Shown here: positions 6,211-33,150 of the stretch, in pieces
How the letters are laid out: the number at the start of each line of letters is the position of its first letter
Position numbering within the stretch: the first letter of the stretch is position 1
Assembly: GCF_006345805.1 (NCBI RefSeq)
Contig: NC_043002.1
Coordinates: 25,234,001 to 25,298,000 of the forward strand
Source: Octopus sinensis
Lineage: Eukaryota
DNA: 64,000 bases
Reading direction: 5' to 3'
Made by a program: the position numbers and the translations under genes
The notes under the pieces: generated by a model
What the model was told of the DNA's origin: nothing
Seen by the model: the letters and a program-made list of their open reading frames with translations, nothing else
Databases searched by the model: none

Positions 6211-6234
6211 CGTAATAATCCCATGGTCCCCGAG
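6211..6234 (-). CDS. DYNC1I: Dynein IC 24-nt exon (ARGPWDYY)
   Basis: Acceptor ttgctgacattgaag, consensus donor gtaagt, phase 1 to 1. It ends in DYY, like the AHATDYY segment recalled from Drosophila Cdic/short wing downstream of the TQT site. Confidence 0.75.
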
Positions 6235-7696
6235 CTTCAATGTCAGCAAAGTAAAATGATAGACAAAATCAAAAACAAATGCCACATAAGAAACTAAGTT
6301 GATAAGCTTTTGGTTTAGTATTTTTGCTTTTATAGATATTTCCATATCTTTTTTTAATTCATCTCTAATGAATAAGAGTTTAATTTAATTAGATAAATAT
6401 AAATCTTAAAAATTCTCCTACAACTAAACCCAGTCAACTGTCTTCTTTAAATATATATGTTACAATAAATAACAATAATAATTCCACCAGAGATGGGAGC
6501 ATCCCATCAACAGCCATAATCTAGCTTTCATCATGATTTCAGTACTTTTTAGTAATGTCACTCCCAACAGGGGTGCCTTGTATCCTGAGGCTGCCTGGAG
6601 AATCCACAAAATTCATAAAATATGGCTTATGTGTGTGAGTGTGCGTGCATATGCTTGAAATGAGTTACTATATACGAGATAAGAACACTTAATACTGCTT
6701 TGGTAGAGTTTAATTTAACAACCAAAAGCTATGATTCAAATACTTCAGACAGTTACAATTTATTTCATGGCATTACACTAGGGCATCATTATGCAGTATA
6801 ATATAATTATATAAAACAAATTTTTATGATCCTAGATATTTTAATCCTAGCTTTTAATCATTATAACTTCATACTACTATAAAAATTAGCTTTATTTTCT
6901 TAGCTTTTTATCATATTTTGCAGTATCTATCTATACTTCTCGAGTTTTCCTTATGTACCTGCTTCAGCTATAGACACATGTGATTTCAGTCTATATCTGA
7001 AGAATGAGATTGATAAGAAAGATCAGGAAACAATAGATGAACAAACACAGGTGCTTCCAGAAGATCCAAAAATGTTACATCAAGATTTTTTATAATGTTT
7101 GAGTTGTTCATTTGTACTTATTTATTTTGGCCAGTCATGCAGCATGAAACAGAGATGCAGGCAAGAGCATATGTAAAGGAATTCATTTTTGTAGTTGAAT
7201 ACCTTCACAACCATTCCAAGTTTGTTAAGAATATATAATTACTCATCAAATCGTTATATTCAAAGCAGTGTAATCTCCTGGTTATTTTCAATTATATACT
7301 AATTATTTTCCATTATTTTGTCTTTTTTTTTCTTGTAGACTTATATCAATTTGAATTTATCTTTTACTTTTGTGAATTTTCACATATTACATTTTTTAAA
7401 TGAATGATATTTTTTATATTCTTTCATAAAACCATTTTCATTTTGTTATAAAACTGATTAAAATTTTAAATTAAAGCATAAAGTTTAAAATTTCAAATAA
7501 TAATAATAATGTTTTCTAATAATAAATCATAATTAGCCAATTAAAAACAAATAAAATCCAAGCCCACAAATTTAAATTTTCATTACTTATTTAAATACTT
7601 TGAATAAAAAAATTAAAGGAAAGCAAAATATAGAATATACAATAAGCAAAATGATAAACAAAGCTATATGATTTGTACAATATGGACACACACACA

Positions 7697-7762
<66 letters not shown>

Positions 7763-8025
7763 AAGCACAAACACACAAATATATAAACATCTAGATTAGC
7801 ATGAAAGGTGTGAAGATATGAACGACAAATGCAGATCAAATAGGAAACAATAATCAAATAAGAAAAGTATAATTAAGATATTAATATCATTATGTCCAAC
7901 CATAATGTCATTAATTTTTTGTTCTTGTTGGTATTGTTTTTTTACCTTTCCAATCAGCAACAAAACTAATACACCCAGACTCAAACCATTTTCATAAAAA
8001 CATCTTAACTACAAAATGAAATATT

Positions 8026-8056
<31 letters not shown>

Positions 8057-8109
8057 AGATGATGATGAATAACAGTAATGAATGATGATGATGATAATAA
8101 TAATAGTAG

Positions 8110-8540
8110 TAATGGTTTCAAATTTTGCCACAAGGAAACTACTCTGGGGGAGGGTATGAGTTGATTACATCGACCCCAGTGTTCAACTGGTACTTATTTT
8201 ATCGACCCTGAAAGGATGAAAGGTTAAGTCAACCTCAGCAGAATTTGAACTCATAACGTAGCAACAGGCAAAATACTGCTAAGCATTTCATAATAATAAT
8301 AATAATGAACAATGAAGAATGATAGTTTTAAATTTTGACACAAAGCCAACAATTTTGGGGGAGAGGCTTTAGTCAACAGCATCAACCCCAGTACTTTGCT
8401 GCTACCTTATTTTAATGACCTTAAAAGGACAAAAAGCAAATTTGATCTCAGTGGGATTTGAAATCAGAACATAAAGAGTCAGATTAAATGCAGCAAGGCA
8501 CTTTACCCAAAACTCAAGTGATTCTGCCAATCTACTACTG
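8110..8540 (+). mobile_element. Two tandem copies of an abundant short SINE-like repeat
   Basis: Shared core gattacatcgaccccagt...ggtacttattttatcgacc..aaaggatgaaagg.aaagt..acctc.g..gaatttgaactc. Confidence 0.72.
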
Positions 8541-11499
8541 TAAAATAATAATGTATTAGTCATGTGTACTAAATATTAATCATTCAGCACTATCATTTTC
8601 ATTTACTAACATCCCATATTTTCCTTATAACTCACCTTTTCATTTTCTCTACAAGGTGTATCAGAGTTCCTTCAAGGACCACTCATAACATAATTTTTTT
8701 TTTTTTAAATCATTATCATTTTTTGTTATTTTTAAATGCAGCACCAATAATTTTGTCAAACATTAAGAATGGTCTGGTGTTCTCAGGATATGGCTGCAGG
8801 TATGGCTTTCTATTACTGGTAGATCAGTGATATAATGATGGTAATCACAATAGCTTCTCTCATTGGCACAAGACCACATAACTATAGAAAAGGAGTATTG
8901 TCTTCAGATCAATTCCAGAGTTATAAACTGACAAAGTCCATGCAAGCAGAACTTCAATTTGTTTCATATTTAAGCTTGAAAGTATGGGGTTATTTCATTG
9001 AAGAAGAAATGATAACCGGTAACTTTGTGACATTCATGCCTTTCACAAGCAATACAAGTGATAGCAAGAATTGAAACTAGGTCAATAGGTTCGTTCACTT
9101 CTTTATGATGGTAAGCAGAAATGTAAAGAAATTATTTTTAATATTTTCCCCATTATTACACAACAATAAATTGTTATTAGGTATTCCAAATCAATTTTTT
9201 TAAAAGGAGGACACAGTCTACTTGACAGCAGCTTTCTAGAATATTTCATCAAGAGCTGAAGAATGAAAGATACAGTTGTCTGATGGTTCTGAACTCAGAA
9301 CAATAAAGCTTAAAATATCACAAAATGACCATTCCATTCTGCCTTACCACAATTTCCATTAAATTCACAAACCTAATTAAAAACACTTAAGATTATAACT
9401 GTGAGAGAATCTAATAATGGTAGCTTTAACGAACTCATCTATTGAGTGCTAGTAATAAAATTATAAATTCAATAAGGAACTGATTTTTCTGAAATCAATT
9501 CCTCAGTTCATGTTATATCCACATCAGTGGGGAGTAGGGGTGTATGTGTGTGTGTGTGTGTGTGGATATATATAATGAAATTTGTTTTTTCCAGGACTTA
9601 AATTTTATCTGATGGTTTATTCAAAACAAATTTTATAATAAATTTGACTTTACCTCCAACACAGTCCTTGTGTCAATAAATGTCTTTGTTATTCTTAAAC
9701 TTGTTTCAACTTGCACCTTAAATTAACCTGCTAATTCATACATGACATTAAAGATGATGTGTATACAGATGACTGCCCTCACAGTACCATGTTTATTACA
9801 ACCAAATTAATTTACTGTATGACCATCTTTATGAAACAACTTCCAGAAAAACAAAGAATGTTTGGATATCATTATTATAGCTATATTTAAGTGAGAAGAG
9901 GGCAAATAACACTGAATCTTATAAAATCTACAAGTTCAGTTGAATAAACAATATAACTAACCAGCAAAACAGTAGAAGCTATAAACAGAAATTGTTAGGA
10001 ACATTGCAGAGAAGTTTCTTTTGCAAACAGAAATCTATATTCAATGTATAAATGTGGAGAGGATATAGCTGCTGAGATGACTGCTACAGGTGAGTGCTGC
10101 TGCTCAGTTAAGCAGCCCAAAGAGGATGTGCTAACCTTGAGGACAAAGGTTAGATAGCATATGCTGCAATATTTTAGCCATGTTATCAGAGTTCAGATCC
10201 TCTGTATCCACAGCCTTAAGGCCAGGTAGACGAAAATGACTTGTAGGCAATGAAGATGAAGAGTTGACTGTATCAGAAACACCCTACCGAAAAGGATATA
10301 GCACAGGACAACAGTATATGGCAAAAAGTGATGATGGTGTCTAAAGTCCCTGATCCTTAGATATGAAGATGGGCATATTCATTCATATGTTGGCATACAC
10401 AAAGACAAATCTGTGGATGTAAACTTGCTGAGGAGCCTACTCCAGTGCTAGATGAGAAGGGAACCTTCAGATACAGAAGGAACAAGAACTAAATCATTTT
10501 TATCATTCAACAAAAGGCCATATTTGTGACAAGTAATGCTGACAATAAACTATTGTCTACTATACATAATAAATGTGTAACTTTCCAAATGCAAAATGAT
10601 AGACTTGTTATATTAGAGAATGAACCAGTCCAAATATTGTGACAATATCAGGTTAAAAGTCAGTAAAATTATAATCATAGTTCAACAAAATACTTCCTTA
10701 ACTCAAAGATAATGCTGTATAACTTGGGGAAACAGCAGTACTAGTGTCCAAAATATGACTATTATAAATATCTCTCAATAGATATATTTTGTAATGCAAC
10801 ACATGATTGAAGGCCTGCATCAAATAGTAATCCAAAGATTTTCCTAGTAACTGACATTGTGCAAGCACAGTGAATAAGGGTGCTGTTTAGCCCTAGGTCG
10901 GCCCTGATTGAGGAGTTCTATGATCGAAGGCATTCCAGAACCATGTGTGTGTGTTTGTGTTCAAGTAATGTGCATTTAGAACCACATTATATAGCCTTCA
11001 TCCTATAAGACAGTAATGAAATTTGAGAAATTTAGCAGCTATTTCTAACAGATCAAGTAACCCTACTGAGTATCCCACATTCTCTAGTAAAAGCTAAATA
11101 TAGGAACAACTAAATACATTGTGATGGTGTTAAGTGGCAGATATTGAAATAAGAAAAATAAAAGGACTTTCATGATAGGGTAGGGAGAAATAAATCCTTT
11201 GTATAATATATTCATGTCCACTCTGTAGCAAACTAAATTCAAAAGGTGAGAAAAGTCACAAGAAACAACTTCAGAATCTAACTAGTTTTAATTAACAGTT
11301 GAAGACTGGCAAAGTCAGACAAGATTCTAAACAGGATGTTGAGGATGCAAACCTCTATTTTTCAAAACTTTCAAACAATGGTAATAATTCTTTTTACAAT
11401 AGGACCAATAATAATGATTATAATAAAACCAATAGTAGTAGTAATAATGATAGTTTTAAAAAATTTTCTTTTTATTATGATATATAAAGAGTAATAATA

Positions 11500-12390
11500 A
11501 TGGTTTTTGATTTCGGCACAAAGTCAGCAATTTTGAGGTAGGGTATTGCCCGATACAATTGACTTTAGTAGTAGACTGGTACTTAATTTTATTGATCCCA
11601 GAGGGATAAAAGCTGAGAATATATAAATCCAGACAATAGTCATCATCTTGCTACTATAGGCACAAACCTGAAATTTTACGGGGAAGGAGATAGTTGATTG
11701 CATCAACCCCAGTGCTCAACAGGTACTTATTTTTATCAACCCCAAAAGGATTAAAGCAAAGTTGACCCCACAGAATTTGAACTTAGAACATAAAGATGGA
11801 CAAAATGCATAGGGCATTTTGGCCAATATGCTAATGATTCTGCCAGCTAGCCATATTCATAATGATAATTATAATATTGGCATAAGGCCAGCGATTTCAA
11901 GATAGGGGTTGAGTTGATTACATTGGCCCCAGGGCTAAACTAGTACTTATTTTATCGACCCCAAAAGGATGAAAGGCAAAGTTGACCTCGGCAGAATTTG
12001 AACTCAGAATATAAAGACAGATAAAGTGCTGCTAAGCATTATGCCTAGCATCCTAACGATTCTGCCAGCTAATGATGACTAATAATGAGTTCTGAAAAAA
12101 ATATTGGTTTCATATACTGAAACAAAATGATAATTATTATTTCTAATTTTAGGTTGTTTTTTTCCCCCCCTAATTTTGATTATTTTTAATTTAGGCACAA
12201 GGTTAGCAATTTTGAGGAGAGAAAATTAGTTGATTACATTGATCTCAGTAGTTAATTGGTACTTTTTTTTATCAACCCAATATGATGAAAGCAAAACTGA
12301 TCTTGGTGAGATTTGAATTCAAAAGGTAAAAGGCCATAACCAAAATATTTGTCCAACACACTAACAATTCTGCCAATCTACTGCTCAAAC
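11500..12390 (+). mobile_element. Cluster of about four tandem copies of the same short SINE-like repeat
   Basis: The core is repeated near 11510, 11660, 11880 and 12190, each copy introduced by an AAT-rich tract. Confidence 0.75.
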
Positions 12391-12950
12391 AATAATAATT
12401 TCTAAAAGATATGAAGCTTCAGAGTTTCAGAGGTGACAAAATGCTAAGTTCAGACATTCAAGCCTTCTCCTAATGTGTTGGTAATGCTAAAGAATTACAT
12501 CAGAGGGAGGACAACATGCCTCGGAATTAGTTCATCAAGAACTTAGCACCACAACAGATCTGTATTTTGTCTCTTTTCTTTCCTCACATGTCTGATAAAC
12601 TTACAAGTGAGTATGACCTGGTAACATGTACCATGCTTTTGCTAACTGTTTTAAGTAACTATGTGATCACAGACACTCTCTTGACTCTCCTCTCCTATCC
12701 TTTAATCCAGTATGAACATCAAGGCTGTGACAGAGGGAAAAAGAAACAGACATGATTGGAGCAATACGAAATGCCTTGTTCAAAGACACAACATGCCATC
12801 CAGCCCAAGAATCAAATCTGCAACCTTACAACTATGAACCCAATACCTAACCATTAAGCCATGTGCCTTTTCCTCTTTGTTACACCTTTTGGAAAGATTT
12901 ATCTATCTATCTATCTATCTAAATATATATCAATGATGATGATGATGACA

Positions 12951-12987
<37 letters not shown>

Positions 12988-13243
12988 TATATATTTACAA
13001 AAGAAATTTAAGACTGACTCAACAAATAATACAAAATATACATCTGATTAATAATTAAATATATTACAGTCATACAAATGTTTAAGTACATCAGTCATAC
13101 TGAAATACTTGCACAAAAGGTTTTTAATTATTAATCACTCAGTACCAGTGGTTCCCACTCCTAAGAAATGCTTGATCAATTTTTGCACCCACATAAAAGT
13201 GGGAAAATGAAAATGTAAAATTTCTCAGAGGTTTTTATTTTAC

Positions 13244-13288
13244 TCTTTAAACTGGACCACATATCGTATTGTGGGCGAACAAACTGAA
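13244..13288 (-). CDS. Candidate cassette microexon of dynein IC (VQFVRPQYDMWSSLK)
   Basis: Strong acceptor ttttttctttag, moderate donor gtaaaa, 45 nt, open in phase 1, CpGs retained. Confidence 0.42.
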
Positions 13289-14450: not shown

Positions 14451-14489
14451 TGTCGTCGTTTTCAAGACGTGCATCCACTTGGGGAAAAT
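14451..14489 (-). CDS. DYNC1I: Candidate cassette microexon of dynein IC (DFPQVDARLENDD)
   Basis: Acceptor gctgctgctttccag, donor gtgagt, 39 nt, open in phase 1 and frame-preserving. CpGs are retained in an otherwise CpG-poor intron. Confidence 0.6.
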
Positions 14490-15209
14490 CTGGAAAGCAG
14501 CAGCAAATTTAGGGGTTACATTGTTATTCGTAATGGTTAACCACAAACAGAAACAGAGTTTCATGAAAATTGTTAAGAAAAATAACAAGTAAAATGGAAA
14601 GAGAGAAAAAATAATTTTCAATAAAAAGGTTCTGCTTCTTTTAAAACAGGAAAAACCTGGTTTATTTCTGCCTTTTCTCTGATGTTCTTTTGGAGCAGGA
14701 AAACGTGATTGAAGATTGAAATCAAACACTAGTTATAAGCAATATCTACTTTTAATTAGAAAAAAATTAAAATAAAATCACAACAAAAGTCCAAAACATA
14801 AGAGACTTACTATCAATGAAATTGCATCTTAAATGCAGAGAACTTAACATCTTAAATTAGACTAAATATTGTTTAATTTTTGATTGATAAAATACGGTAA
14901 AAACAGAGACACCACTACAACTATACTGCCTTAAATAAGTCACTTCATTGGCACCTTCACATACATTGATTTTCTTAGATTAGCTGATAAAGAATTTGGG
15001 GAATTACATAAGAAATTAAAAATATTTTGGTATTGAAATAGAGAATTCACATTAAAGAATTATAAAAATCATTTTAACAGAGAGAATATCAAATGATGTG
15101 AATTCCAAGACTAACACGAGAAAGCAATTCCTTATGAGAATCAGAGAACTTAAAATATCACATTACAATGACATGAGACCACACACACTCTTTTCGAGGG
15201 AGGGTATAA

Positions 15210-15845: not shown

Positions 15846-17042
15846 AAATAAACTAAAACAATATTCCAAACATCCAAAAATTGTAATCTATTTGCAGGTA
15901 ATATTCTATTGATAGAGTAGATGACAGAAGTGGTAAAATGAATCATTCCAATTAGTTTAAAATACTACAGGGGAAAATGCTATAAAATAACATGTACATA
16001 TATATATACATATATATATATGTTCACATATTAACACACACACATATTTTTGCACGTACACACACATAGTGATTTCCCTGCAATATAACCATAAATTAAA
16101 ATAAAAATCTCTGGAGAGTGAGCTTTTCCAATACGAGCCTCATTAGTTACAAAATGAGAGTCAAAAATTAAAATAAAGTAAAAGTAAAATAGAGAAATAA
16201 ATTGTAATTAAATAAAAAAAGATCAATATTCTTAAAAATATATATATAATCAATCTAGGAGAGAATCCAAAAATTAATTTTTATTAATGCTGAAAGAAGA
16301 AATATATACACCTATATACATATTATATACATACATTCACACACACACATATATATATATATATATAACTGTGTGCACTCACTAGCAAGTTGGAAACATA
16401 CACTCATGCTTACTTGCTTTTTCCAACAGATGATTAACAATATTAAATCTGAAAAAACATTTTATATATATACCACATACATACACATACAGTCACACAC
16501 ACTGTATATACTTGAATAAAATCCATCTTTTGCAAAAGTCATATCTCTTTTTGGAATTTAAAAACCTGAAATTTTCTATGTATCACAAGCAAAAAAAAAA
16601 CAAAACAAAAAAAAAACCCAGTCAATTCTAGTATTTCCAAGTTAGCAGACCAACAGTTGTTTGTCGAGGGATTTTCCTGTATGTATATGTTCTGATAAGG
16701 AAATCAACCCCATCGCCTCCATTGTCTTTTGATGGACGAGTCACATAAATGTTAAGTGATGGATGTCTACAACTCATTAACTGAGAAGCGCTACAATTAC
16801 TATAACATCATTAGTGTGATCCAAAATATAATTTTAGCATCATTTATATAAACTAGATCATATGCATTAACCAGTACAAATCATTGTAATTCATTTTTTT
16901 CTTCTTTTGCTCATAGAAAATAGATTATTTAGAGCCATTACAAGCCCTCAAAAATTACATCCATGTAATAGTTGATCTCTGAAATTTTAGCTCAAAATTT
17001 GATCTAAAAAGCACATTGCATTTTATACAAGTATAAACAGTA

Positions 17043-17088
<46 letters not shown>

Positions 17089-17674
17089 TATATGAAATCA
17101 CACACAGAAAAAGTGATGAAGAAATGAAAAAACAAAATGAAAAGATGAAGTAATCATTTTAACTAAGAAGTCATACTAACCATGCAAAATAAACACGCAC
17201 ACATATATGTACATATATATAGCAAACAAGTAGCATACGAAACAGAGGAAACAACAAACATGTAGCTACACAGTGCATAACAGCTGAACAGTATTGAAAT
17301 GAAGATTATTTTTTTAATGAAAAATTCATTACATAAAGCTCAGGAAGAAATAATGGAAGTAGGGCAAGCTAATAATATCATTTTCTAAAACTGATCTCTG
17401 TTTAAAGGAATTACATGTAGCAGAAAAGAAAAGAATAATGAAATTTGTTAAAGGATTTGCAACATATTTCTGTGTGTGTGATTAAAGTGTTAAAACTTCA
17501 TTATCAACAACACGGTAAGGAATGAGGTGGAGATTGGACAGGGTGGATTTCACTAAACGAGCTATTTTACTCATAGGGAAAGCGCATCAAAGTGTGAGTG
17601 TGTGTATGAATGCATGTATGTATATATATATATATATATTATATATATACGTATACATACATACACACACACAG

Positions 17675-17706
<32 letters not shown>

Positions 17707-17835
17707 ACATATGCATACAGATACATATCTGTATACATATATGCATGTATATACATATATGTATATATAATATAAATAATATATAAATATATGCATATAT
17801 ACATACATATATGTACATACCTACATATATATATG

Positions 17836-18685
17836 TATATATACATGCATATATGGGTACAGGACATCAAAAAAATGTTGAAAACAATGAGAAACGAAAA
17901 CATAAAAACAAAAACAGGGGAACAAACTTTTTTTCAAACAATGAAAAAAACAAACAGAGAAAAGAATATTCTCCTTCTTCAGTTGTCCCCGTTTGATCTA
18001 CTCCACGTTTCAAAGGCAAGGACAAGACACGACTTCATTGAAACAGTCCTTCCCGCAAAGCAAATTAAATAAAATTTGGAATGCGGAGGGTGAAAATGGT
18101 AACAAGAACAGGAGAATGAGAACAAAACAGTAAAATCATACGGTATGGCTGTTAAGCCGAGACGATAGAAAAAATATTTTTGAATGCTAAGAGAATGAGC
18201 TTATGAAGGAAACAGTATAAGCACGTCTTTTCTTTATGAAGGTTGTGGGCAGAAAGACAGATTATCTTTCGTCACGTGTCAGTGACGAGTGAGTCGAGGA
18301 GGAGGGAACGGTGTAGAGGAGAGAAGAATAGGGAAGGGTGGGAGAGAAAACCAGAAAGGATGAAGAAAAAGAGAGGGAGAGAGATAGACAGAGAAGAGAT
18401 AGTAAAGGTAGAAGAGTGCGCATCATAATTATTAGGATAAAACTTACTTGGAAAAGGATGCATGGCGTTCGATCATATAATAATATAAATAATATATAAA
18501 TGTATGCATATATATATACATATATGTATATATACATGAATATATAGGTACAGGACATCAAAAATACGTTGAATACAATGAGAAATGAAAACGTAGAAAC
18601 GAACTGTTTTTCGAACAACGTAAAAAACAGAGAAACAGGATATACATCATAAAGAATATTCCCCTTCTTCAGTTGTCCCTGTTTT
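17836..18685 (+). repeat. Degenerate direct duplication (17836-17990 vs 18520-18685) of an unclassified interspersed repeat
   Basis: gtacaggacatcaaaaa...acaatgagaaa.gaaaac and aaagaatatt..ccttcttcagttgtccc each occur twice. The second copy ends at the LINE poly(A) junction. Confidence 0.7.
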
Positions 18686-18696
18686 GTTTTTTTTTT

Positions 18697-19525
18697 TGCT
18701 GTAGTTTCAGCTCAGAGCTGCAGCCATGCTGATGCACCGCTATTTTGCTACACTGTTATTACTGAGAGCCTCCTTCAATATGTTGCACTTGCTGAAGAAT
18801 GGAGTTTGATATAGCTACCCTCATTTGCACCTCTTGCCTTGATGTAGGTTCATCTGGGACTTTCGACAGGAAGAGGTCCAGCTTTGATTTAAAAATGCCT
18901 ACATCTACTTTGTGCAGGTTCCTCAGGTTGATGCAGTAACTGGTCCTGAAGCACGATGGCTTTGCTGAGATCTTTGGCACTATGCAGTGTCGTCCCATTC
19001 TGGCATTGGTGTAGCTTTCAATGCCAAAATTTGGCACAATTCCTTCCAGGATGTTCTCGACGTATATTACTGCATACCTCTCCTGCCTTCTCTCCAGGGA
19101 ATAGAGTCTTAGCTGTTTCAGCCTTTCCCAGTAGCTGAGCAGTTGCAAAGGGATGATCTTCTTTGTGAATCTTCACTGGAATGCTTCAAGGTCCGCTGTT
19201 AATTTCAGACTGTTGGGTGACCATAGCTGTGAGCAGTAATCCAGGCAGCTGAGGACAAATGTCCTCCAGAGGACCATCACGGTTTCCTTATCTCTGGTTC
19301 TGAATGTTCTTAGGATCCATCCAGCCAGTCCTCTGCACTTTGTCGCCATCCTGGTAATGTACACTTGGAATGAGGTATCATCACTCATGTCAATACCCAG
19401 GTCCCTCACTGATTTAGGCTCTGGGATTGAAATTCCCTGTGGACCAGTTTCATTTTCAGTTTTGTATGCTGGTAGCACAGGGCTTGGAATTTTTCAGCAT
19501 TAAACTGCATTTTATTATCCTCAGC
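18697..19525 (-). mobile_element. 5'-truncated CR1/L2/Jockey-group LINE, RT C-terminus and 3' end
   Basis: Translation VRDLGIDMS...ILRTFRTRD...LDYCSQLWSP...LSYWERLKQLRLYSLERRQERY, with stops and frameshifts. It ends in an A-rich tail near 18690. Confidence 0.88.
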
Positions 19526-19529
19526 TCAT

Positions 19530-20412
19530 CTGTAAATTGAGTCCAACTCCTATTGCAGATGTGCAACATCGCTGGGGTTCTGTATTTTCTGCGAGATTTT
19601 CATATTGTCTGTGTAGCTTGCCAGAGTGGCTATCCAGGTTCTTGAGGGCATATCTTATGGAAAGGATGTGTTCCGATGGTCAGACAATCCATCTGTTGTC
19701 AACACCTATTAAAAGGAGGACTGGGCATGCCGTGGTTGATGATGCACAGACGCGCGTTGAGACTGCAATATCTTGGGCTCTACGTAGACGACAGTGAACA
19801 GGTGTGGTCGCTTTCCTACAACTCGTCTCCATGACCGAACTGCAGTCGTGGATCAAAAAGAGGCCGAGGAAGGGTGAATGGCACTGTGAGTGTCGTGTTG
19901 CTCTCAAGCAACTATGCCGTCCCAGGTCGACCTTGAGTGACTTCAACACAACCAAAGCATTCTATAGGGGATTAGTGGAGGGGAGGTACGACGACGACGA
20001 GCTCAAGGCAAACCTGGACGTCGAAGAGGAATACCTGACCTGCCTGTTTGAGACGACTTTCGGGCCAGGGCCCATGGACAACTTCCAGAGATCCCTGGCC
20101 TGGCAGTGCTACCGAGAAGCGCTACCTGTTCGACATAAGCTCAACAGACACGGCTCGAGATGCAGTCAGAGCGACGAAACTGTTCTGCACGCACTCATAC
20201 AGTGTTCAACAATTTCCGACCTGTGGGCTTATGTCAAACAACTGCTGTCACGTGTGGGACGAGTCGGTTTATCAGCCGAGTCTATCATCAATATTGTCAC
20301 ACCTCTTTCTTTCAAACGGGAAGGAAGAGCTATTTTCATCATTCTTGTGGCTATGACAAAAGAATGTATCTGGTGGACGTGTCTGAAAGGATTGGAGACA
20401 AACACTTTCCTC
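19530..20412 (+). mobile_element. Tx1/L1-group LINE fragment (post-RT region and zinc knuckle)
   Basis: VRQSICCQHLLKGGLGMPW...[13 protein letters not shown]...[16 protein letters not shown], a zf-RVT-like CCHC pattern. Frameshifted and cut off by a minisatellite at 20413. Confidence 0.82.
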
Positions 20413-21368: not shown

Positions 21369-21410
21369 AGCTTCGTCTGAAGTTGAAAACCTGACCAAGA
21401 AGACCCCAGA
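21369..21410 (-). CDS. Weak candidate cassette microexon (VWGLLGQVFNFRRS)
   Basis: Donor gtgagt. The acceptor ggtcttcag gives 42 nt open in phase 1, but competing nearby AGs give non-multiples of 3. Confidence 0.3.
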
Positions 21411-24400: not shown

Positions 24401-24932
24401 TGAATATAAAACAGACTAATACTACAGAGATGTTATTGCATACAACATAATGTACAGATATACAACATATACTATAACAGTCTCAAAAGTAATCCCTAGT
24501 TTGGATAAGGAAATCGAAAGAAAAAAGTTAATAGTTGATAATTAACCAATTGTAAACATCAATTAAGTCATTAATTGACCAGTATCCAATTTATCCTTAT
24601 TTAATCAATATCTAATTTAAATATTGACAGTACCTCATGTTTTCAGAGAAACAATTGCAACATGGGACAGTTTCAATGGGATAGGAGTTAATTGGCTCAA
24701 AGTTTCAAGCTAAGAAATAAGAGGATTACAATAATTTTCGTTCATTTATTGTTTGTAAAGGGTAAACATTTTTTAAAGGGTAAAAGGGATCAGAAAACCT
24801 AGTGTTGCAAATCCTTCACAAGATTACTACTCTGTCATGATCTGAGCAGGGAGATTCTCAAATGCGGCACATTCCAAAAGATGTATAACTGAATAGATTA
24901 CAAGGCATTTATTTTGGAAATGGCTTACTCAC

Positions 24933-24965
24933 TCGATGAAGATCCTTTGCTGCCATATCGGTTGC
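24933..24965 (-). CDS. DYNC1I: Candidate cassette microexon of dynein IC (GNRYGSKGSSS)
   Basis: Acceptor ccactttaccatctgtgtag, donor gtgagt, 33 nt, open in phase 1 and frame-preserving. No homology check was possible. Confidence 0.55.
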
Positions 24966-27776: not shown

Positions 27777-27889
27777 ATGCTTACAGCACCTAGGGTTCCC
27801 AAGCGGTCACCCATCTAAGTACTAACTAGGCTCGATGTTGCTTAACTTCGGTGATCAGACGAGAACCGGTGCTTTCAACGTGATATGGC
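27777..27889 (-). pseudogene. 5S rRNA-derived copy, about 7 nt 5'-truncated
   Basis: The minus strand reads gccatatcacgttgaaagcaccggttctcgtctgatcaccgaagttaagcaacatcgagcctagttagtacttagatgggtgaccgcttgggaaccctaggtgctgtaagcatt, a recognisable invertebrate 5S with box A/box C regions. It is single copy, lacks the 5' strand of helix I and has no oligo-T terminator. Confidence 0.88.
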
Positions 27890-28261
27890 TATATATATAT
27901 ATACACACACATACTTATTCAATCACAAAACAACTTCTGTTTCTAGTAGTCAGGTGTACATAGAAATCTGTGATACATTCATCAGTTGCTTACCGTTATG
28001 CATACAACTATAGTAAAGAGACCAATGATAGGTGGAAACAGTTGAAATAGGAATACTTTCAATTCATTGTGCAAATAACATTGCTTAAATCTTTAAAATC
28101 AATATTAAAAGCACAATTTAAAATCATGATACCATAAGTTTTCAGTACAGATGACTACCAAAAAAAGAAAAAGAGAAAGCCACATATATGTGAGATTTAG
28201 CATATTCTGATAGGAAATCATAAACAAAGTCTCACAGCCTAAGCTTTGGAAATTTGAGCCC

Positions 28262-28870
28262 CATCAAATATAATTCTTGATCTTGGCTGTCTACGACAGT
28301 CTACCAAGCGTATCCAAATTCTTCTGCTGAAGGAAGGTGGTATTACCAGCTTGCACTCTGTGCCTGAGTAAAATGGCTCAAGAGCACATCCTCAGATGCT
28401 GTTCAAAAGCCCTGAGTAAGGAGAGCTACTGCTGGCACCATAACCAATCACCAACTACAATAAGATAAGTCATTATAAACATCTCTACCCAATGAAGTAT
28501 ACCATCACTTTTGTTTGGGATGAAGCTAAATTCACTGGGAAGCAAAAGGTGGCTATAGAGAGTACTTGAAGTTCCCAGAAACTACTTCCGCATCACCAAA
28601 CGTGGTGCTGATCTCAGAAGCACTCAAGCAGGTCATCTGATAAGAACTCTTGTTTATTGAGAGGGTCATACTAAGGAAGTCAATGAGGAGGAAGGTATAT
28701 AATGAACTGTTGGAAGAATACCAAAGCAATGGGTGGAAAGTAAGGTGTTGCTCACTGAGGTGAGATACAGTGGTTTCACAATAGCCAGTAAGCATAGAGC
28801 CATCATGTTATCCACCTAAGCAGCGAAAGTTGCTTCAAAGAGGATGTGAATCAATAGGTGTCATCATTGA
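28262..28870 (+). mobile_element. Degenerate HERO-like (RLE) non-LTR retrotransposon C-terminus
   Basis: Patchy translation FLILAVYDSLPS...EHILRCCSKALSKG..CWHHNQ...PNVVLISEALKQVI...YNELLEEYQSNGWK resembles the CCHC plus PD-(D/E)xK region of HERO/R4-type elements. Many stops. Confidence 0.68.
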
Positions 28871-31800
28871 AAGATACGATGTACTTCACAACTGATGAAG
28901 TGTCCATGTGCATCACAAGTTGATGCATGTACACAACATAAAAACAAGACAGAAATACTTTCTGAAAATATAATTTATAAAAAGCTAAAAATTCTAAAAG
29001 GATTTACACAAAGCCAAAATTGCCCTCATAGGAATTTTACTCTAAGATACTTAGTTGATCATAAATCTGCAACTGTAATGTATTGACATTAGGAGCACAT
29101 GTAACTGATAGTTAACTGATGAACAGCATTACAATTAAGCTTTGTAAAATGTACTTTAACTAATATTAATAAGAAAATCAAATTCAGATCAGAGCAGTAA
29201 AAGATTTGATTTCAATTCTTTATATTAATTCCTTGAGATTAACAGAGAATTATCTCACCTATATGTCATGTGGCTTCTCAAGCAAGCAGAAAGAATGGGC
29301 TTTAGCTTTTCATTTTTTTTTTTTTATAATGGCTTGGAAATTCAGTTTTTGTTTTTTTTGTCATTTTATTTCATAAATTTATTTACACAGCTAAAGAATT
29401 GGAAGTATTTAGAAGCAACCTTTATTATAAATTCATTTAGAAGTCCAAGCTATCATGAAAAAAAAAAGTACTTAAAAAATAGTGGTTGCTTACTTGAAAA
29501 CCTCATACACAACTGGTAAAATACTAAAAAGAGACCAAATTGAAACTAAATAAGAGCTTCTGAAGACTAAAGTTATCAGCAAAATGTGATTTTTTTTTTT
29601 TTTTTACTTCTCTTGGAACAAATAAAAGAAATGCAACCAATTCTCAAAACTAAAAATTATTTTCCATAATTTATATTTATTTTCTCTTTGCTTGAAATGG
29701 TGTAGTAATTTTCCAAACAAATTAACTTTTATCATTTAAAATTATACTGAAACAAAGCCTGAGAAATAATGCAGTTCACTAAATAATAAATTTTTTTTAA
29801 AGAATTTAACAATTGTAATTTGAAAATAGAGTAATATCAAAAAATATTATGCCAAGGGATATGATTTTTTTCTTGTAAATTTAATATACTTTAAATCATT
29901 AAAGTAATAAGAAAATCTAAATAAATACACACACAAAGCTATTTCAAAACATCTTAAAAAGAGACATAGCTATATCCAGATTCTCATAGAGTGACTTAAA
30001 TATTATGAGAAGGGTACATGAAGTTACTTGCGTATAAGCCTAAATATTTTTTTGTGTGTGCATCTCTAAGTATGTAATATACATGTTAAGGATGTCATTC
30101 AAAATTTTTTATTCAAATGTACGCTAATGGTTATACATTTTACCAAACAGAAGACAAGGTATGTGATCCAATAACCTGACCCGCAGAATAACGAACAAGA
30201 CATGGAGTAATAACATCAACATTAGCAGATTTTTACCTAACAATCATGGTTCTGTACTAGTATCTAATCAAGCTTAACTAATTTTTATATCAACTTTAAT
30301 ATTCCCATTCAATGAAATAAAATAACAGCATTTTTTTTTCTTAGTACACTCATCATTTTATAGTATTTTCAATGAAGATTTACTCCATGATTAATTATTC
30401 ATTACGGATTTTGTAATTAATACACAGACTGCTAAGTTTCAGAAGAATATTGAGCATCAAGAGTATCATAAAACTAAAACTCTTGGGAAAGGCATGAATA
30501 TCTCATTCCAATTCCCCTCTTCCAATGCATTTTCTCTCTCTATGCACCTGTCTGGAAATTACATTATCTTCAGTCATTGATCTCATAGCTTTTGTTTCAA
30601 AGACCCCACCACATATCTATCTATATATCTACACACACACAATACATATTTGATTTGCTATCAATTATGGAAGATTCTTCTAGAAAAGGTTATTTCCTTA
30701 CAGCCAGATACATCTAGCCATTCTTATATTGTCTTGTTCTTTTTAAACTGATATCCTTTATTTAATGAAATACTTCGTGTTTAGAACAATCCTCTAAAAT
30801 AAAATAAAATTTAATTTTAAAAACACAGGATTCAAACCTAACTAAAAATCTTTCCAACTGAGTGTAAACATGTGTCTGTACAAACTTTTACACACTCACA
30901 CAATACAAATAAATAAGAAATCTCAATGAGTAATCAACATTTTACTTTTTTAAACAGATTTATTTCCACCTCCCTTTCTTTTTTTTTCTTTTGCTATCCA
31001 TGTGTTCTGACATTCTATAAAGTAACAGAGAATGTTCAATGATTTGCATTCCTTCATCAGTGTCTTGCCTATAACCAAAACAATTCTCTTTTGCTCATTA
31101 CTCCAAACTGTAAATAGACCCCATGAATAAGTGCCGTCACCACTATAAGTAACAAGAGCACTGGTTTGTAAACAAGTGTTTTCTTACCTTGCAGTTCTGA
31201 GTTTAAATTTTACTATAGAGCCCCACTAGACTGTCTTTCTCCATAGACACATGAATTTGAAGCTTTCACTAAAACCCTGACCAAACTGTCTTACACAATT
31301 CTATAAGTGATTTGATTTATTTAAATCTATATTAATTAAAGTGTAAGTTACACCAAAATAGTTAAACAGTAAAAATACGATTGCTTGGTTTTTCTGATGT
31401 TAATGTAGAGTTTCAAAAGTATACAAGTGCATCAAGAAGAAAATTTCAAATCACCAGTTAAGACAAATCTAAGCAGGCCTCAAGGTTTCATACAATAAAT
31501 CTCACAAAAGATAATAAAAGTTAATTTTGCTACAAATATCTGTGTTTGCCCTTCCTCAGCAAGAAAAGAAGTTAAATAAAACCAACTGGTTAAAAGGTTT
31601 ACAATACTATCATCTCATATGTCTGATGACAATCAAATGCAACCATACACACACATAATATTGATACATATACAGCATTGATATAAAGTCTCCTCTTTAA
31701 TGCCTGAAAATACTTTAAATGTGTGTAGCCCTGCGGCTACACACATTCATTTATCCTTGATCAGATCTAAAAGCAGACCATCTAGTTGATTGGCACTCAC

Positions 31801-33034
31801 CAGCCACCACAACTGTAAGTCCACAACTTTCAGCACCCTTGGCACATCTACTTTTCATTATCCTTACTACAGTGCCCCAGCCTGCAAACCCACTCTAAAT
31901 CATTTCTCCACACAACTCCCTCCTTGCCTATATTTTCCCACAGAACTTCACACTGAACATACATCGACATCAATTTCACCACGCTAGGACCTAGAAATGC
32001 CATGAATGACACTTTTCCTCAGCTAATTAAATTAGAGAAAAAAGTCCCACTTCCCCTCTAATAACAGAAAAATACTGCAAATACCTAAGACAGAATATTT
32101 CCCTATTCCAATAAATTTTTGAATAGAAACATTGGTATGGAAACACCAATGTCCCCTTACACACACATACACATCTGATACAATCAAAGCTTGAAATTTG
32201 AGGCTAATAATGAATAACATTTAAAAGATTTTTTTTAAATGCAAATAAAATGTGTCCCTTCCAGGAGAGTAGTTAGATAGTTTGAAGGGTTTTTTAAAAT
32301 TCTTTTTTCCTTTTTATTTTTCAAATTTTTTTTTTATATTTCTTTACAATTTTAAACAGACAAGATCGGGAGAAATATTGATCTGATAAAAACCATGTAT
32401 GTGATGTGAATAAGAAGAAAAGAGTGGCTGTTATAATAACTCAAATGAAGTACAACTCAAGGGTACTGTCCATAGTTATTTGAAACAGAGGACATTTGAC
32501 CCAGCTTTGTTAGTAGTTATTATAAGCAAAGTCCAGATAAGGTATACACACCAAACATTTTATTAACAAAAAGAAAATTCACATTAAAAAAAATTAAAAA
32601 CATGAGAATTCAAAAATAATTTTAAAAAATACATAAAATTAATTGAAATATCTAATATTGTTTTCCAGTAAGCATTATATATAAAACTAATAGTAATTAG
32701 AAAACGTTTTAGAAACTTTGTTCCACATTTTAAACCTTAAAGATGATTCTTTTTTCAATAGCTAAATAAATAAATTAAAAATAGTGCCTTAGTTTTACCA
32801 AACAAAATACAAAGATCAGTTAAGAAAATGAATTAGCTTTTATGTCACAGTATTTGTTTTACAACAATCAGGAAGGAAAAAAAAGGACTTAAAATAAGAA
32901 TCTAAACAAAATCAAAATGACTAGACATAAATATTGTAATAACTGACTATTCTAAAACTATGGAAGCATCTAGATAACCACAATTCTAGCTAATATATCA
33001 AGTAAAAGAGGAAAGAAAAGAGTTTGCAACCAAC

Positions 33035-33150
33035 CTTCACGATCTCCTGTTTCAACACTTGTAGTCTGAGTTTCTTTACTGTATGAGACATTCTCTTTTG
33101 GAGCAATGGTCGTCTCTGAAACCTTGCAGATGGACAACTTTACCTTCGGC
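33035..33150 (-). CDS. DYNC1I: Dynein IC coding exon 4 with Tctex1 and LC8 binding sites (RPKVKLSICKVSETTIAPKENVSYSKETQTTSVETGDRE)
   Basis: Contains the KETQT LC8 motif preceded by a Tctex-binding-like segment (compare human [26 protein letters not shown]). 116 nt, phase 2 to 1, donor gttggt. Confidence 0.92.

What the first reader, a model, noticed from the sequence alone, without database searches (positions are those of the whole stretch)
6211..33035. Array of candidate phase-1, frame-preserving microexons in the dynein IC variable region
Seen in sequence: between the KETQT exon (ends phase 1 at 33035) and the DYY exon (6211-6234) are ~27 kb containing several AG...GT segments of 33, 42, 39, 45, 33 and 9 nt. 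All are multiples of 3 and open only if entered in phase 1. Established: dynein IC isoforms in Drosophila and mammals vary by alternative splicing in the disordered region around the light-chain sites. Inference: this locus may encode a combinatorial cassette system next to the Tctex1/LC8 sites, possibly larger than in the model species and easily missed by annotation. Some candidates could be chance matches in AT-rich DNA.
Basis: partly seen in the sequence, partly recalled or inferred. Interest (0 to 1): 0.78.

Follow-up and report, generated by a model that had tools for sequence, protein, structure and literature searches.

The report
Octopus dynein IC microexon cassette array
This is the alternatively spliced linker region of the Octopus sinensis cytoplasmic dynein intermediate chain gene: two of the six proposed microexons are real and already annotated, four look like chance matches, and the huge introns also hold one unannotated conserved 30-nt exon candidate and paired complementary RNA boxes that probably guide exon choice.

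Summary
The window is Octopus sinensis chromosome DNA; the gene, on the minus strand, is cytoplasmic dynein 1 intermediate chain. All six AG...GT segments exist at the stated coordinates. None is open only in phase 1, and 833 comparable segments occur in the interval (about 726 expected by chance).

Two candidates are real phase-1 cassettes: 24965-24933 (GNRYGSKGSSS) and 14489-14451 (DFPQVDARLENDD). Both are in NCBI isoforms of three octopus species and in cuttlefish transcripts, and both are conserved in Argonauta and cuttlefish DNA. The DYY "anchor" (6234-6211) is itself optional.

The other four have no deep conservation. One loses its donor and gains a stop in O. bimaculoides, one loses its acceptor, one lies in a dispersed repeat, and the 9-nt one is uninformative.

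The array is already annotated (at least 38 isoforms; X1 reconstructed exactly) and extends about 21.7 kb beyond the window.

New here:
- An unannotated, deeply conserved 30-nt phase-1 exon candidate at 29523-29494.
- Five pairs of conserved, mutually complementary intronic boxes 7-19 kb apart, which enclose groups of cassettes and probably bridge splice sites.
- A +9-nt variant of the DYY exon that uses a TG acceptor.

The parts
33035..33156 (-). Constitutive KETQT (LC8-site) exon. It ends in phase 1, and its donor is GTTGGT at 33034.
   Evidence: The peptide SIRPKVKLSICKVSETTIAPKENVSYSKETQTTSVETGDRE is present in all isoforms.
32809..32830 (-). Intronic box 1a (CATTTTCTTAACTGATCTTTGT), about 205 nt downstream of the KETQT donor. 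It is the 5' arm of long-range duplex P1.
   Evidence: 96% identical to cuttlefish within otherwise unalignable intron. Reciprocal best duplex partner of box 1b in O. sinensis and cuttlefish. The consensus has 22 pairs.
29494..29523 (-). Exon N: a predicted, unannotated 30-nt phase-1 microexon, ctctttttag|TATTTTACCAGTTGTGTATGAGGTTTTCAA|gtaagc, encoding VFYQLCMRFS.
   Evidence: The island is 87-93% identical to cuttlefish and Argonauta, with AG and GTAAGC kept. The substitutions are R>K, a synonymous Q change and F>L. 30/30 identical in O. bimaculoides. PWM rank 9 of 1021. Single copy in the genome. Not found in any isoform seen or in any cluster representative.
24933..24965 (-). Cassette A, 33 nt, phase 1, encoding GNRYGSKGSSS. 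A reader candidate, confirmed.
   Evidence: Present in NCBI isoforms of three octopus species and in cuttlefish transcripts and proteins. Mapped. Conserved with E 1e-34 to 1e-42.
24803..24821 (-). Intronic box 6a (TTGTGAAGGATTTGCAACA), about 110 nt downstream of the cassette A donor. It is the 5' arm of duplex P6.
   Evidence: Reciprocal best partner of box 6b in O. sinensis. The core is 15 bp and includes one compensatory pair (G.U / A-U / C-G).
21369..21410 (-). Reader candidate, 42 nt, encoding VWGLLGQVFNFRRS. Rejected as a chance match.
   Evidence: Absent from all isoforms. No orthologous hit in Argonauta or cuttlefish. In O. bimaculoides the donor GT is lost and a TGA appears in phase 1.
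17445..17464 (-). Box 6b (TGTTGCAAATCCTTTAACAA), the first element of the intronic hub.
17379..17401 (-). Box 1b (ACAGAGATCAGTTTTAGAAAATG), hub element and 3' arm of P1.
   Evidence: Single copy in the genome.
17283..17301 (-). Box 2a (CATTTCAATACTGTTCAGC), hub element and 5' arm of P2.
   Evidence: Reciprocal best partner in cuttlefish, but only rank 4 or lower in O. sinensis.
16107..16144 (-). Box 3a (AATGAGG..TTGGAAAAGCTCA..CCAGAGAT), the 5' arm of P3. Its partner, box 3b, lies at window -2831..-2868.
   Evidence: The consensus has 27 pairs in three helices.
14451..14489 (-). Cassette B, 39 nt, phase 1, encoding (D/N)FPQVDARLENDD. A reader candidate, confirmed.
   Evidence: The cuttlefish orthologue encodes NYPKVDALLEDND and is present in a Logan transcript (L018). 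PWM rank 1.
13244..13288 (-). Reader candidate, 45 nt, encoding VQFVRPQYDMWSSLK. Rejected.
   Evidence: It lies inside a dispersed repeat with at least 29 other genomic copies. No hit in Argonauta or cuttlefish. PWM rank 118. The O. bimaculoides orthologous site falls in an assembly gap.
6959..6967 (-). Reader candidate, 9 nt, encoding AEA. Unsupported.
   Evidence: The annotated 9-nt insert is DIE/NIE, not AEA. No conservation beyond Octopus. The O. bimaculoides sequence CTGAAGAAG differs at the background rate.
6562..6594 (-). Reader candidate, 33 nt, encoding GSLRIQGTPVG. Rejected.
   Evidence: The acceptor AG is AT in O. bimaculoides. No hit in Argonauta or cuttlefish. Absent from all isoforms.
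6211..6243 (-). Cassette D. The 24-nt form (6234-6211) encodes (A/T)RGPWDYY. The 33-nt form (6243-6211) adds ACATTGAAG, encoding (D/N)IE, through an upstream acceptor whose dinucleotide is TG.
   Evidence: Some isoforms carry ARGPWDYY or DIEARGPWDYY and others skip it, for example X38 with GDRE|DDDTDS. No AG..GT 9-mer encoding DIE exists in the window. The extension and its ctg| boundary are conserved in three genera, and Argonauta has the synonymous ATC.
6152..6170 (-). Tentative box 5a (CCTGCTTGTTGAGCATGCC). It is complementary to the acceptor region of cassette E (GGCTGTTGTCGAGCAG|G, window -5907..-5923).
   Evidence: It is the best partner only in cuttlefish.
6017..6039 (-). Box 4a (CTGCCCAAATAAACGCACCTTCC), about 175 nt downstream of the D donor. 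It is the 5' arm of P4. Its partner, box 4b, lies at window -6268..-6290, downstream of cassette E.
   Evidence: Duplex energy is -41 to -44 kcal/mol in four species. Single copy in the genome.
5464..5480 (-). Box 2b (GCTGAACAGCTGAAATG), the 3' arm of P2.
43848..43862 (-). A 15-nt cassette encoding VWNRL, upstream of the light-chain sites and outside the finding's range.

Best explanation
SHOWN. The interval is the first 27 kb of a 48.6-kb alternatively spliced region of the Octopus sinensis cytoplasmic dynein 1 intermediate chain gene (minus strand). It lies between the constitutive LC8-site exon, whose donor is at 33035, and the next constitutive exon at window coordinate -15530. Every unit here is entered and left in phase 1, so any subset keeps the reading frame. 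The only side effect is that the first residue of the next unit flips (D/N, A/T, G/R) with the carried base. The real units are: cassette A (24965-24933); cassette B (14489-14451); cassette D (6234-6211, or 6243-6211 through a TG acceptor); cassette E (87 nt, -5923..-6009); and three nested acceptors at -15476, -15500 and -15530.

INFERRED. 29523-29494 is a further, rarely used or tissue-restricted 30-nt cassette. Five pairs of deeply conserved, pairwise complementary intronic boxes form RNA duplexes in the pre-mRNA: P1 (1a-1b), P6 (6a-6b), P2 (2a-2b), P3 (3a-3b) and P4 (4a-4b). Boxes 6b, 1b and 2a sit in tandem in a hub at 17464-17283. The 5' boxes sit 110-205 nt downstream of donors (KETQT exon, A, D). 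The duplexes enclose N+A (P1), B+D (P2, P3) and E (P4). My reading is that they loop out groups of cassettes and pull a donor next to a far acceptor. This would allow efficient skipping, since the all-skipped form is the one most often assembled in cuttlefish data, and would set which combinations are made.

At the protein level the cassettes vary the length, the Ser/Pro phospho-site content and the acidic-aromatic motifs of the disordered linker between the LC8 site and the region before the WD40 domain.
For: Gene identity and strand. The contig length of 120,472,873 equals that of the O. sinensis RefSeq isoforms.

Cassettes: peptides read in 55 isoform or transcript proteins and mapped to AG..GT exons. 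A rule-based builder reproduces five known isoforms exactly, and it predicted X1 and X3 of two species, which were then found by exact look-up. A, B, D, E and N are conserved in Argonauta and cuttlefish DNA, while the four other candidates are not. Their splice sites or frame are broken in O. bimaculoides, or they are repeat-derived.

RNA boxes: every conserved non-exonic octopus-cuttlefish island has a complementary partner among the other islands. In unbiased scans of 1617 windows (O. sinensis) and 740 windows (cuttlefish) the predicted partner is the global best, with z from -4 to -7. This holds for P1, P3, P4 and P6 in octopus and for P1-P4 in cuttlefish. Duplex energies are -25 to -44 kcal/mol in 3-4 species. 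Consensus helices have 20-27 pairs. Substitutions fall in loops: 48% of unpaired columns vary against 11.5% of paired ones, p=1.5e-8. P6 has one compensatory pair. The boxes are single copy.
Against: There are no RNA-seq junction counts or structure-probing data, so the splicing effect of the boxes is pure inference. Almost all paired positions are invariant, with only one compensatory change among about 120 pairs, so pairing is not proven by covariation. The paired/unpaired test is partly circular because the structure was derived from the same sequences. Sense and antisense duplex energies do not differ. P2 is not the best partner in O. sinensis. P6 is best in only one direction in cuttlefish. 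Exon N is absent from all 55 proteins seen and from all cluster representatives, and its peptide is unusually hydrophobic for this linker. NCBI isoform combinations may be model-built rather than observed as full-length molecules.
Confidence: 0.8

Rival explanations
1. One reading: all six AG..GT segments are genuine, largely unannotated microexons, which would make the array much larger than annotated.
For: All six have AG and GT and a phase-1 open frame. 21410 and 6594 rank 15 and 24 of 1021 by a crude splice-site PWM.
Against: About 830 such segments occur by chance. The four extra ones are absent from 55 isoforms and from X1, the longest annotated isoform. None has an orthologous match in Argonauta or cuttlefish. 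In O. bimaculoides 21410 loses its donor and gains a stop, and 6594 loses its acceptor. 13288 lies in a dispersed repeat.
Confidence: 0.03
2. The conserved intronic boxes are binding sites for splicing regulators, or DNA-level elements such as enhancers. On this view their pairwise complementarity is incidental, and no RNA duplex forms or matters.
For: The boxes are nearly invariant, with almost no compensatory substitutions. Strand asymmetry through G.U pairs is not detectable.
Against: Five or more independent pairs each find their partner as the global best among hundreds to thousands of windows, in two lineages. Variation concentrates in bulges and loops. One pair covaries G.U / A-U / C-G. 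The order of the boxes relative to donors and cassettes is kept while loop lengths change about threefold: P1 spans 15.4 kb in octopus and 3.8 kb in cuttlefish.
Confidence: 0.15
3. The duplexes are real but serve another purpose. They might promote back-splicing (circular RNAs) of the enclosed microexons, or create double-stranded substrates for ADAR editing, which is extensive in cephalopods.
For: Inverted complementary sequences flanking exons are the classic circRNA-promoting arrangement (established knowledge, not tested here). The duplexes of 15-27 bp flank N+A, B+D and E.
Against: The enclosed exons total only 63-87 nt, which is very small for circles. The duplexes are intron-intron and at least 110 nt from exons, so they cannot direct exon recoding. 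No data here address either process.
Confidence: 0.1
4. The 29523-29494 island is not a coding cassette. It could be a conserved exon-like decoy or regulatory element, for example a splice-site pair that recruits U1/U2AF to aid removal of the long intron.
For: It is absent from all proteins seen and from all cluster representatives. Its flanks are as conserved as the 30 nt themselves. The peptide VFYQLCMRFS is hydrophobic, unlike the other cassettes.
Against: The length is a multiple of 3 and the frame is open in the required phase in four species. AG and GTAAGC are kept over the octopus-cuttlefish split. The four substitutions are conservative or synonymous in phase 1.
Confidence: 0.35

Closest known systems
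Alternative splicing of mammalian cytoplasmic dynein intermediate chains Dync1i1/Dync1i2 (Kuta et al. 2010, PMC2908135) and of Drosophila Cdic/sw (the latter from memory)
   Same: It is the same protein family. In both cases the alternative segments are short, frame-preserving and Ser/Thr-rich, lie in the disordered N-terminal half near the light-chain sites, and are thought to tune phosphorylation and partner binding.
   Different: In mouse the variable region lies upstream of the DYNLT/DYNLL sites and gives about six protein forms per gene. Here only the 15-nt VWNRL cassette is upstream. The main array (N?, A, B, D, D+9, E and three acceptors) lies downstream of the KETQT site and is spread over 48.6 kb. 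It allows 144 combinations, or 288 with N, and at least 38 are annotated.
RefSeq/Gnomon isoforms X1-X38 of 'cytoplasmic dynein 1 intermediate chain 2' in O. sinensis (e.g. XP_036359649.1), O. bimaculoides and O. vulgaris
   Same: Cassettes A, B, D, D+9 and E and the nested acceptors are exactly those models.
   Different: The annotation says nothing about the intronic boxes.
Long-range intronic RNA pairing that regulates splicing: Dscam1 docking/selector sites, locus control region and balancer structures, and srp and other genes (PMC3535345, PMC4691838, PMC12962786; reviews PMC10790352, PMC11802352)
   Same: Conserved complementary boxes lie kilobases apart in one pre-mRNA. They sit next to donors and upstream of acceptors and are conserved over hundreds of millions of years (for the literature; for this locus).
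   Different: The exons here are not mutually exclusive, since A, B, D and E co-occur in X1, and they are not duplicates of one another. There is no single docking site competing for many selectors. Instead there are separate one-to-one pairs, three of which share a tandem hub. The host is a mollusc. My searches found no paper describing this locus.
TG dinucleotides used as alternative 3' splice sites in U2-type introns (Szafranski et al. 2007, cited from memory)
   Same: The +9-nt form of cassette D begins after ...ttgctg|ACATTGAAG, a TG acceptor next to a canonical AG acceptor.
   Different: The spacing is 9 nt rather than the usual NAGNAG-like 3 nt. Usage is inferred from annotated proteins of two species, not from reads I could inspect.

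Membership tests
Cytoplasmic dynein 1 intermediate chain (DYNC1I; Pfam Dynein_IC2 PF11540 plus a WD40 propeller) | N-terminal coiled-coil region, an LC8-binding K/R-x-T-Q-T motif and a C-terminal WD40 domain, with homology to known intermediate chains. | tested here: met
   tblastn with human DYNC1I2 finds collinear exons. The KETQT motif lies in exon 33156-33035. The top database hits are named dynein intermediate chain isoforms and carry PF11540 and WD40 families.
Frame-preserving alternative cassette microexon | Both included and skipped in transcripts or annotated isoforms. | tested here: met
   Met for A, B and D, and for E outside the window: isoforms exist with and without each, and a cuttlefish Logan transcript carries A+B. 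Not met for 21410, 13288, 6967 and 6594, which are seen in no isoform.
Frame-preserving alternative cassette microexon | Canonical splice sites and a length that is a multiple of 3, both preserved in related species. | tested here: met
   A, B, D, E and N keep their AG/GT and their frame in O. bimaculoides, Argonauta and cuttlefish. 21410 and 6594 lose a splice site in O. bimaculoides. 13288 is repeat-derived.
Frame-preserving alternative cassette microexon (exon N, 29523-29494) | Direct transcript evidence of inclusion. | tested here: not met
   No protein with VFYQL/LCMRF words was found among 5.8 billion cluster representatives. Two guessed N-containing isoforms are not in the collection. 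RNA-seq reads could not be inspected.
Docking-site/selector competing RNA structures for mutually exclusive exons (Dscam1 type) | The variable exons are mutually exclusive. | tested here: not met
   Isoform X1 contains A, B, D and E together.
Docking-site/selector competing RNA structures for mutually exclusive exons (Dscam1 type) | One docking sequence is complementary to many selector sequences, one per variable exon. | tested here: not met
   The duplex matrix shows specific one-to-one partners and no shared docking sequence.
Long-range intronic RNA bridge / looping-out element | Two boxes in the same transcript that are complementary well beyond chance. | tested here: met
   The partners are global best hits in scans of 1617 and 740 windows, with z from -4 to -7, and the duplexes reach -25 to -44 kcal/mol.
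Long-range intronic RNA bridge / looping-out element | Both arms are conserved across distant species in otherwise diverged introns. | tested here: met
   The collinear conserved islands shared by octopus, Argonauta and cuttlefish are exons or boxes. The arms are 97-100% identical in O. bimaculoides, against about 92% intron background.
Long-range intronic RNA bridge / looping-out element | Compensatory (covarying) substitutions that maintain pairing. | tested here: inconclusive
   There is one compensatory pair in P6 and a few one-sided G.U changes. All other pairs are invariant in the 3-4 species available.
Long-range intronic RNA bridge / looping-out element | Disrupting the pairing changes splicing, and restoring it rescues the pattern. 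| not testable with these tools
   This needs minigenes, antisense oligos or genome editing.
TG alternative 3' splice site | The intron ends in TG, in tandem with a canonical AG site, and the product is seen in transcripts. | tested here: inconclusive
   The sequence ctg|ACATTGAAG|CTCGG encodes exactly (D/N)IE plus G. No AG..GT alternative exists in the window. The DIE/NIE forms are annotated in two species. The reads behind those models were not inspected.

The most novel reading that the evidence does not exclude
Combinatorial choice among the dynein IC linker microexons would be governed by a multi-helix RNA architecture that predates the octopus-cuttlefish split. Donor-proximal boxes after the KETQT exon, cassette A and cassette D would dock onto a tandem intronic hub (17464-17283) and onto boxes before and after cassette E. 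Alternative, partly crossing helices (P2, P3, P4 and perhaps P5) would then decide which block of cassettes is looped out. That would be a structure-based splicing code for non-homologous, non-exclusive microexons in a mollusc, and it would include a hidden 30-nt exon.
Probability: 0.4. Interest if true: 0.7.

Novelty: new member of a known kind. Interest (0 to 1): 0.5.

Why it matters
The work does give a clean, testable exon map of a region where the dynein cargo-adaptor scaffold is varied right beside its light-chain sites. The modules RGPWDYY, SPKFVYPNLEWDDEF and VLVYDD are shared across molluscs.

The more interesting result is the set of paired intronic boxes. If they act as RNA bridges, they show how 24-87-nt exons are found or skipped inside roughly 50 kb of repeat-rich cephalopod intron. 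They would also extend long-range structure-guided splicing, known mainly from arthropod Dscam-type clusters and a few vertebrate genes, to non-exclusive microexons in Lophotrochozoa.

They are short, single-copy and exactly defined, so antisense or mutational tests are straightforward.

Tried and rejected
1. A separate AG..GT 9-nt exon for DIE/NIE: none in the window. The insert is the 9 nt directly upstream of cassette D.
2. G.U strand asymmetry, to show that the duplexes act in the sense RNA: sense and antisense energies are similar, so this is inconclusive.
3. An A-upstream to B-upstream duplex (-31 kcal/mol in both species): the base pairs differ between species, so it was dismissed as chance.
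4. D-downstream to E-acceptor pairing (P5): the best partner only in cuttlefish, not in the octopus scan. Kept as tentative.
5. A strong duplex (-49 kcal/mol) between exon N and 3905-3835: the partner is conserved only within Octopus and is absent in Argonauta and cuttlefish. Not part of the conserved network.
6. Islands conserved only between octopus and Argonauta (21716-21653, 7265-7156, 7047-7009, 4954-4926 and others): none is exon-like.
7. O. bimaculoides as a fourth species for P1, P2 and candidate 13288: those sites fall in assembly gaps.
8. Look-up of O. bimaculoides isoform X31 for genomic DNA failed because only the longest product is indexed. This was solved by predicting X1.
9. Guessed isoforms with A+B+DIE+D+E+F (693 aa) and B+DIE+D+E+F (682 aa) are not in the collection.
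10. Rfam scan of the window: only a 5S rRNA, and no known RNA family at the boxes or at exon N.

Full report
**Identity of the locus**

The window is G000:C6:25234001-25298000 of a 2.72-Gb, 13,516-contig genome. Contig C6 is 120,472,873 bp long. That is the same length as the contig that carries the NCBI proteins named [quoted passage not shown], so the window is Octopus sinensis.

Exon 1 is at 51575, the KETQT exon is at 33156-33035, and the WD40 exons lie below the window at coordinates -18130 to -28812. I fetched those 30 kb. Mapping RefSeq isoform X1 gives 20 coding exons.

**Check of the observation**

The KETQT exon does end in phase 1.

The statement that they are "open only if entered in phase 1" is false for every one of them. 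The criterion also has no discriminating power:

| Measure | Value |
|---|---|
| AG..GT segments of 9-60 nt, multiples of 3, between 33034 and 6235 | 1528 |
| Of these, open in phase 1 | 833 |
| Expected in Markov shuffles | 726 +/- 41 |

A crude splice-site PWM (my own approximation, not MaxEnt) ranks the segments as follows among 1021:

| Segment | Rank |
|---|---|
| 14489 (B) | 1 |
| 24965 (A) | 7 |
| 21410 | 15 |
| 6234 (D) | 17 |
| 6594 | 24 |
| 6967 | 54 |
| 13288 | 118 |

**What the transcripts and isoforms say**

I read 55 full-length protein sequences. They comprise RefSeq or GenBank isoforms of O. sinensis, O. vulgaris, O. bimaculoides, Argonauta hians and Acanthosepion pharaonis, plus Logan transcript assemblies of cuttlefish. 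After ...TSVETGDRE they differ by the following modules:

- GNRYGSKGSSS
- (D/N)FPQVDARLENDD
- (D/N)IE
- (A/T)RGPWDYY
- (G/R)SSPRFDSSRIGSPKFVYPNLEWDDEFAE
- AFEIINHL
- VLVYDDNGHT

The sequence then continues with the constitutive (D/N)DDTDSVEAS... The two-way choice of first residue is what phase-1 cassettes predict: the carried base is G or A depending on the preceding unit.

Mapping gives:

| Unit | Window coordinates | Note |
|---|---|---|
| A | 24965-24933 | reader candidate |
| B | 14489-14451 | reader candidate |
| E | -5923..-6009 | outside the window |
| Nested acceptors of the next exon | -15476, -15500, -15530 | give AFEIINHL and VLVYDDNGHT; not separate exons |

Isoform X38 joins GDRE directly to DDDTDS. 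The DYY exon is therefore optional, and the fully skipped intron is 48,565 nt.

A small rule-based builder reproduces five known isoforms letter for letter. Its predictions VWNRL+A+B+D+E+F (690 aa) and VWNRL+A+B+E+F (682 aa) turned out to be RefSeq X1 and X3 of both O. sinensis and O. bimaculoides. So the longest annotated isoform is fully explained by known cassettes.

**The 9-nt insert**

No AG-9nt-GT segment in the window can encode DIE. The nine bases directly upstream of cassette D...ttgctg|ACATTGAAG|CTCGG..., encode exactly (D/N)IE plus the G that makes the next codon Ala. The insert is therefore an alternative acceptor whose intron ends in TG. This stretch is conserved in three genera, and Argonauta carries the synonymous ATC.

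**Conservation test**

I obtained the orthologous genes of three species:

| Species | Locus |
|---|---|
| Argonauta hians | L016 |
| Acanthosepion pharaonis (cuttlefish) | L017 |
| O. bimaculoides | L019 |

A, B, D, E and their flanks give strong collinear matches in both distant species, with E from 1e-7 to 1e-113. The four other candidates give nothing better than E=0.16, and those hits are non-collinear.

Against O. bimaculoides, where intron background identity is about 92%:

- 21410-21369 has lost its donor (gtgagt becomes ttgtgt) and gained a phase-1 TGA.
- 6594-6562 has AT instead of the acceptor AG.
- 6967-6959 differs at one of nine bases, which is the background rate.
- 13288-13244 falls in an assembly gap, so it cannot be compared there.

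The 13288 segment lies inside a dispersed repeat with at least 29 other copies in the genome.

I conclude that two of the six candidates are real and four are chance matches.

The collinear map shows a 68-nt island at 29555-29488 that is 87% identical to cuttlefish. It reads ctctttttag|TATTTTACCAGTTGTGTATGAGGTTTTCAA|gtaagc. It is 30 nt long and open in phase 1 (VFYQLCMRFS).

- The AG and GTAAGC are kept in all species.
- The only substitutions are AGG to AAA (R to K) in cuttlefish, and CAG to CAA (synonymous) and TTT to CTT (F to L) in Argonauta.
- It is 30/30 identical in O. bimaculoides.
- It is single copy in the genome.

It is absent from every protein I saw. A word-based search of 5.8 billion cluster representatives with a model isoform containing it found no protein that carries it. 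Two guessed isoforms are not on record. I call it exon N: a predicted, unannotated cassette, with about 60% confidence. The alternative is a conserved exon-like decoy.

**Paired intronic boxes**

Every remaining conserved non-exonic island between octopus and cuttlefish turned out to be the reverse complement of another such island on the same strand.

| Pair | 5' box | 3' box | Span in octopus |
|---|---|---|---|
| P1 | 1a, 32830-32809, ~205 nt after the KETQT donor | 1b, 17401-17379 | 15.4 kb |
| P6 | 6a, 24821-24803, ~110 nt after the A donor | 6b, 17464-17445 | 7.4 kb |
| P2 | 2a, 17301-17283 | 2b, 5480-5464 | 11.8 kb |
| P3 | 3a, 16144-16107 | 3b, -2831..-2868 | 19 kb |
| P4 | 4a, 6039-6017, ~175 nt after the D donor | 4b, -6268..-6290, ~260 nt after the E donor; locally duplicated at -6605..-6627 | 12.3 kb |

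Evidence for pairing:

- In unbiased RNAduplex scans of the whole variable region, the predicted partner is the global best window. This holds for P1, P3 and P4 (reciprocally) and for P6 in octopus, with z from -4 to -7 over 1617 windows.
- It holds for P1-P4 in cuttlefish over 740 windows. The one exception is box 4b, whose best hit is 0.8 kcal/mol better elsewhere.
- P2 is weaker in octopus, at rank 4.
- Duplex energies are -25 to -44 kcal/mol in three or four species.
- RNAalifold gives consensus helices of 22, 25, 27, 26 and 20 pairs.
- Compensatory evidence is thin. Nearly all pairs are invariant, and there is one clear covarying pair in P6 (G.U, A-U, C-G).
- Within the arms, 48% of unpaired columns vary against 11.5% of paired ones (Fisher p=1.5e-8). 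This test is partly circular.
- Sense and antisense energies do not differ.
- The boxes tested are single copy, and Rfam has nothing at these sites.
- Loop lengths differ about threefold between species (P1 is 15.4 kb in octopus, 7.3 kb in Argonauta and 3.8 kb in cuttlefish). The order of the boxes relative to the exons is fixed.

**Proposed mechanism (inference)**

P1 encloses N and A. P6 encloses the intron after A. P2 and P3 enclose B and D. P4 encloses E. Boxes 6b, 1b and 2a form a tandem hub about 2.8 kb upstream of B.

Formation of a helix would loop out the enclosed cassettes and bring an upstream donor close to a downstream acceptor. The chain P1+P2+P4 would shorten the path from the KETQT donor to the far side of E from 39 kb to under 1 kb. 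That would favour the all-skipped form, which is the form found on the most contigs among the cuttlefish assemblies (13 contigs).

P2, P3 and P4 cross one another, so they may act as alternatives. A possible sixth helix would join a box 50-60 nt after D to the acceptor of E. It is supported only in cuttlefish.

**Comparison with what is known**

- In mouse, IC alternative splicing lies upstream of the DYNLT/DYNLL sites and gives about six proteins per gene (PMC2908135). Here the main array lies downstream of the LC8 site.
- RGPWDYY, GSPKF.YP..EW(D/E)DEF and VL.YDD modules are present in abalone, limpet, scallop, mussel and oyster isoforms. The array is therefore old within molluscs and not a cephalopod novelty.
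- The box pairs resemble long-range RNA structures that control splicing in Dscam1, srp and other genes (PMC3535345, PMC4691838, PMC12962786, PMC10790352). They fail the defining tests of the docking/selector system. The exons are not mutually exclusive (X1 has all of them), and there is no one-to-many docking site.
- I found no paper on this locus.

**Verdict**

The cassette system is real but already annotated, and two thirds of the proposed exons are noise. The unannotated exon N and the conserved box pairs are the parts worth follow-up.

Noticed in passing
window 27778-27896 (-): A full-length 5S rRNA match (Rfam RF00001, 101 bits, model positions 1-120) sits inside the intron between exon N and cassette A. 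The cuttlefish gene has a 5S-like copy in a different intron (L017 8710-8817).
   Followed up: partly
window 6235-6243 (-): The +9-nt (DIE/NIE) form of cassette D needs an acceptor whose last two intron bases are TG (ttgctg|ACATTGAAG). The sequence is conserved in octopus, Argonauta and cuttlefish.
   Followed up: partly
L014 = G000:C8694:270001-279000, match at about 3698-5512 (+): An intronless, diverged copy of a dynein intermediate chain (28-43% identity to human DYNC1I2) with several in-frame stops. It looks like an old processed pseudogene or a decayed retrogene, and it shows none of the cassettes.
   Followed up: no
L015 = G000:C11459:30001-38000, match at 3477-4622 (+): An intronless open frame of 631 aa, without stops, that is 25% identical to the WD40 half of DYNC1I2. 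It may be another WD-repeat or axonemal intermediate-chain-like gene.
   Followed up: no
window coordinates -6605..-6627 (C6:25227373-25227395): Box 4b and its surroundings (about 85 nt) are tandemly duplicated in O. sinensis. Both -6228..-6312 and -6565..-6649 match the single cuttlefish copy at 87% identity.
   Followed up: partly
window 3835-3905 (-): This stretch can pair with the whole exon N region, including both splice sites (-49 kcal/mol). It is present in O. bimaculoides at background identity but absent in Argonauta and cuttlefish.
   Followed up: yes
   Followed up: partly
window 18000-20400 (-): A GC-richer stretch (43% against about 30%) holds several high-scoring exon-like AG..GT segments, for example 20108-20040 and 20350-20303. 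It is not conserved in Argonauta or cuttlefish and may be transposon-derived. That origin was not checked.
   Followed up: no
protein P0015 (O. vulgaris isoform X31): This isoform ends in ...YDVGEVGDLLYLLFLFLNVFFFYPCTSI instead of the normal C-terminus. That looks like read-through into the intron after the penultimate coding exon.
   Followed up: no
window 43848-43862 (-): A 15-nt cassette encoding VWNRL lies upstream of the light-chain sites. It is present in many octopus isoforms and absent in others.
   Followed up: partly
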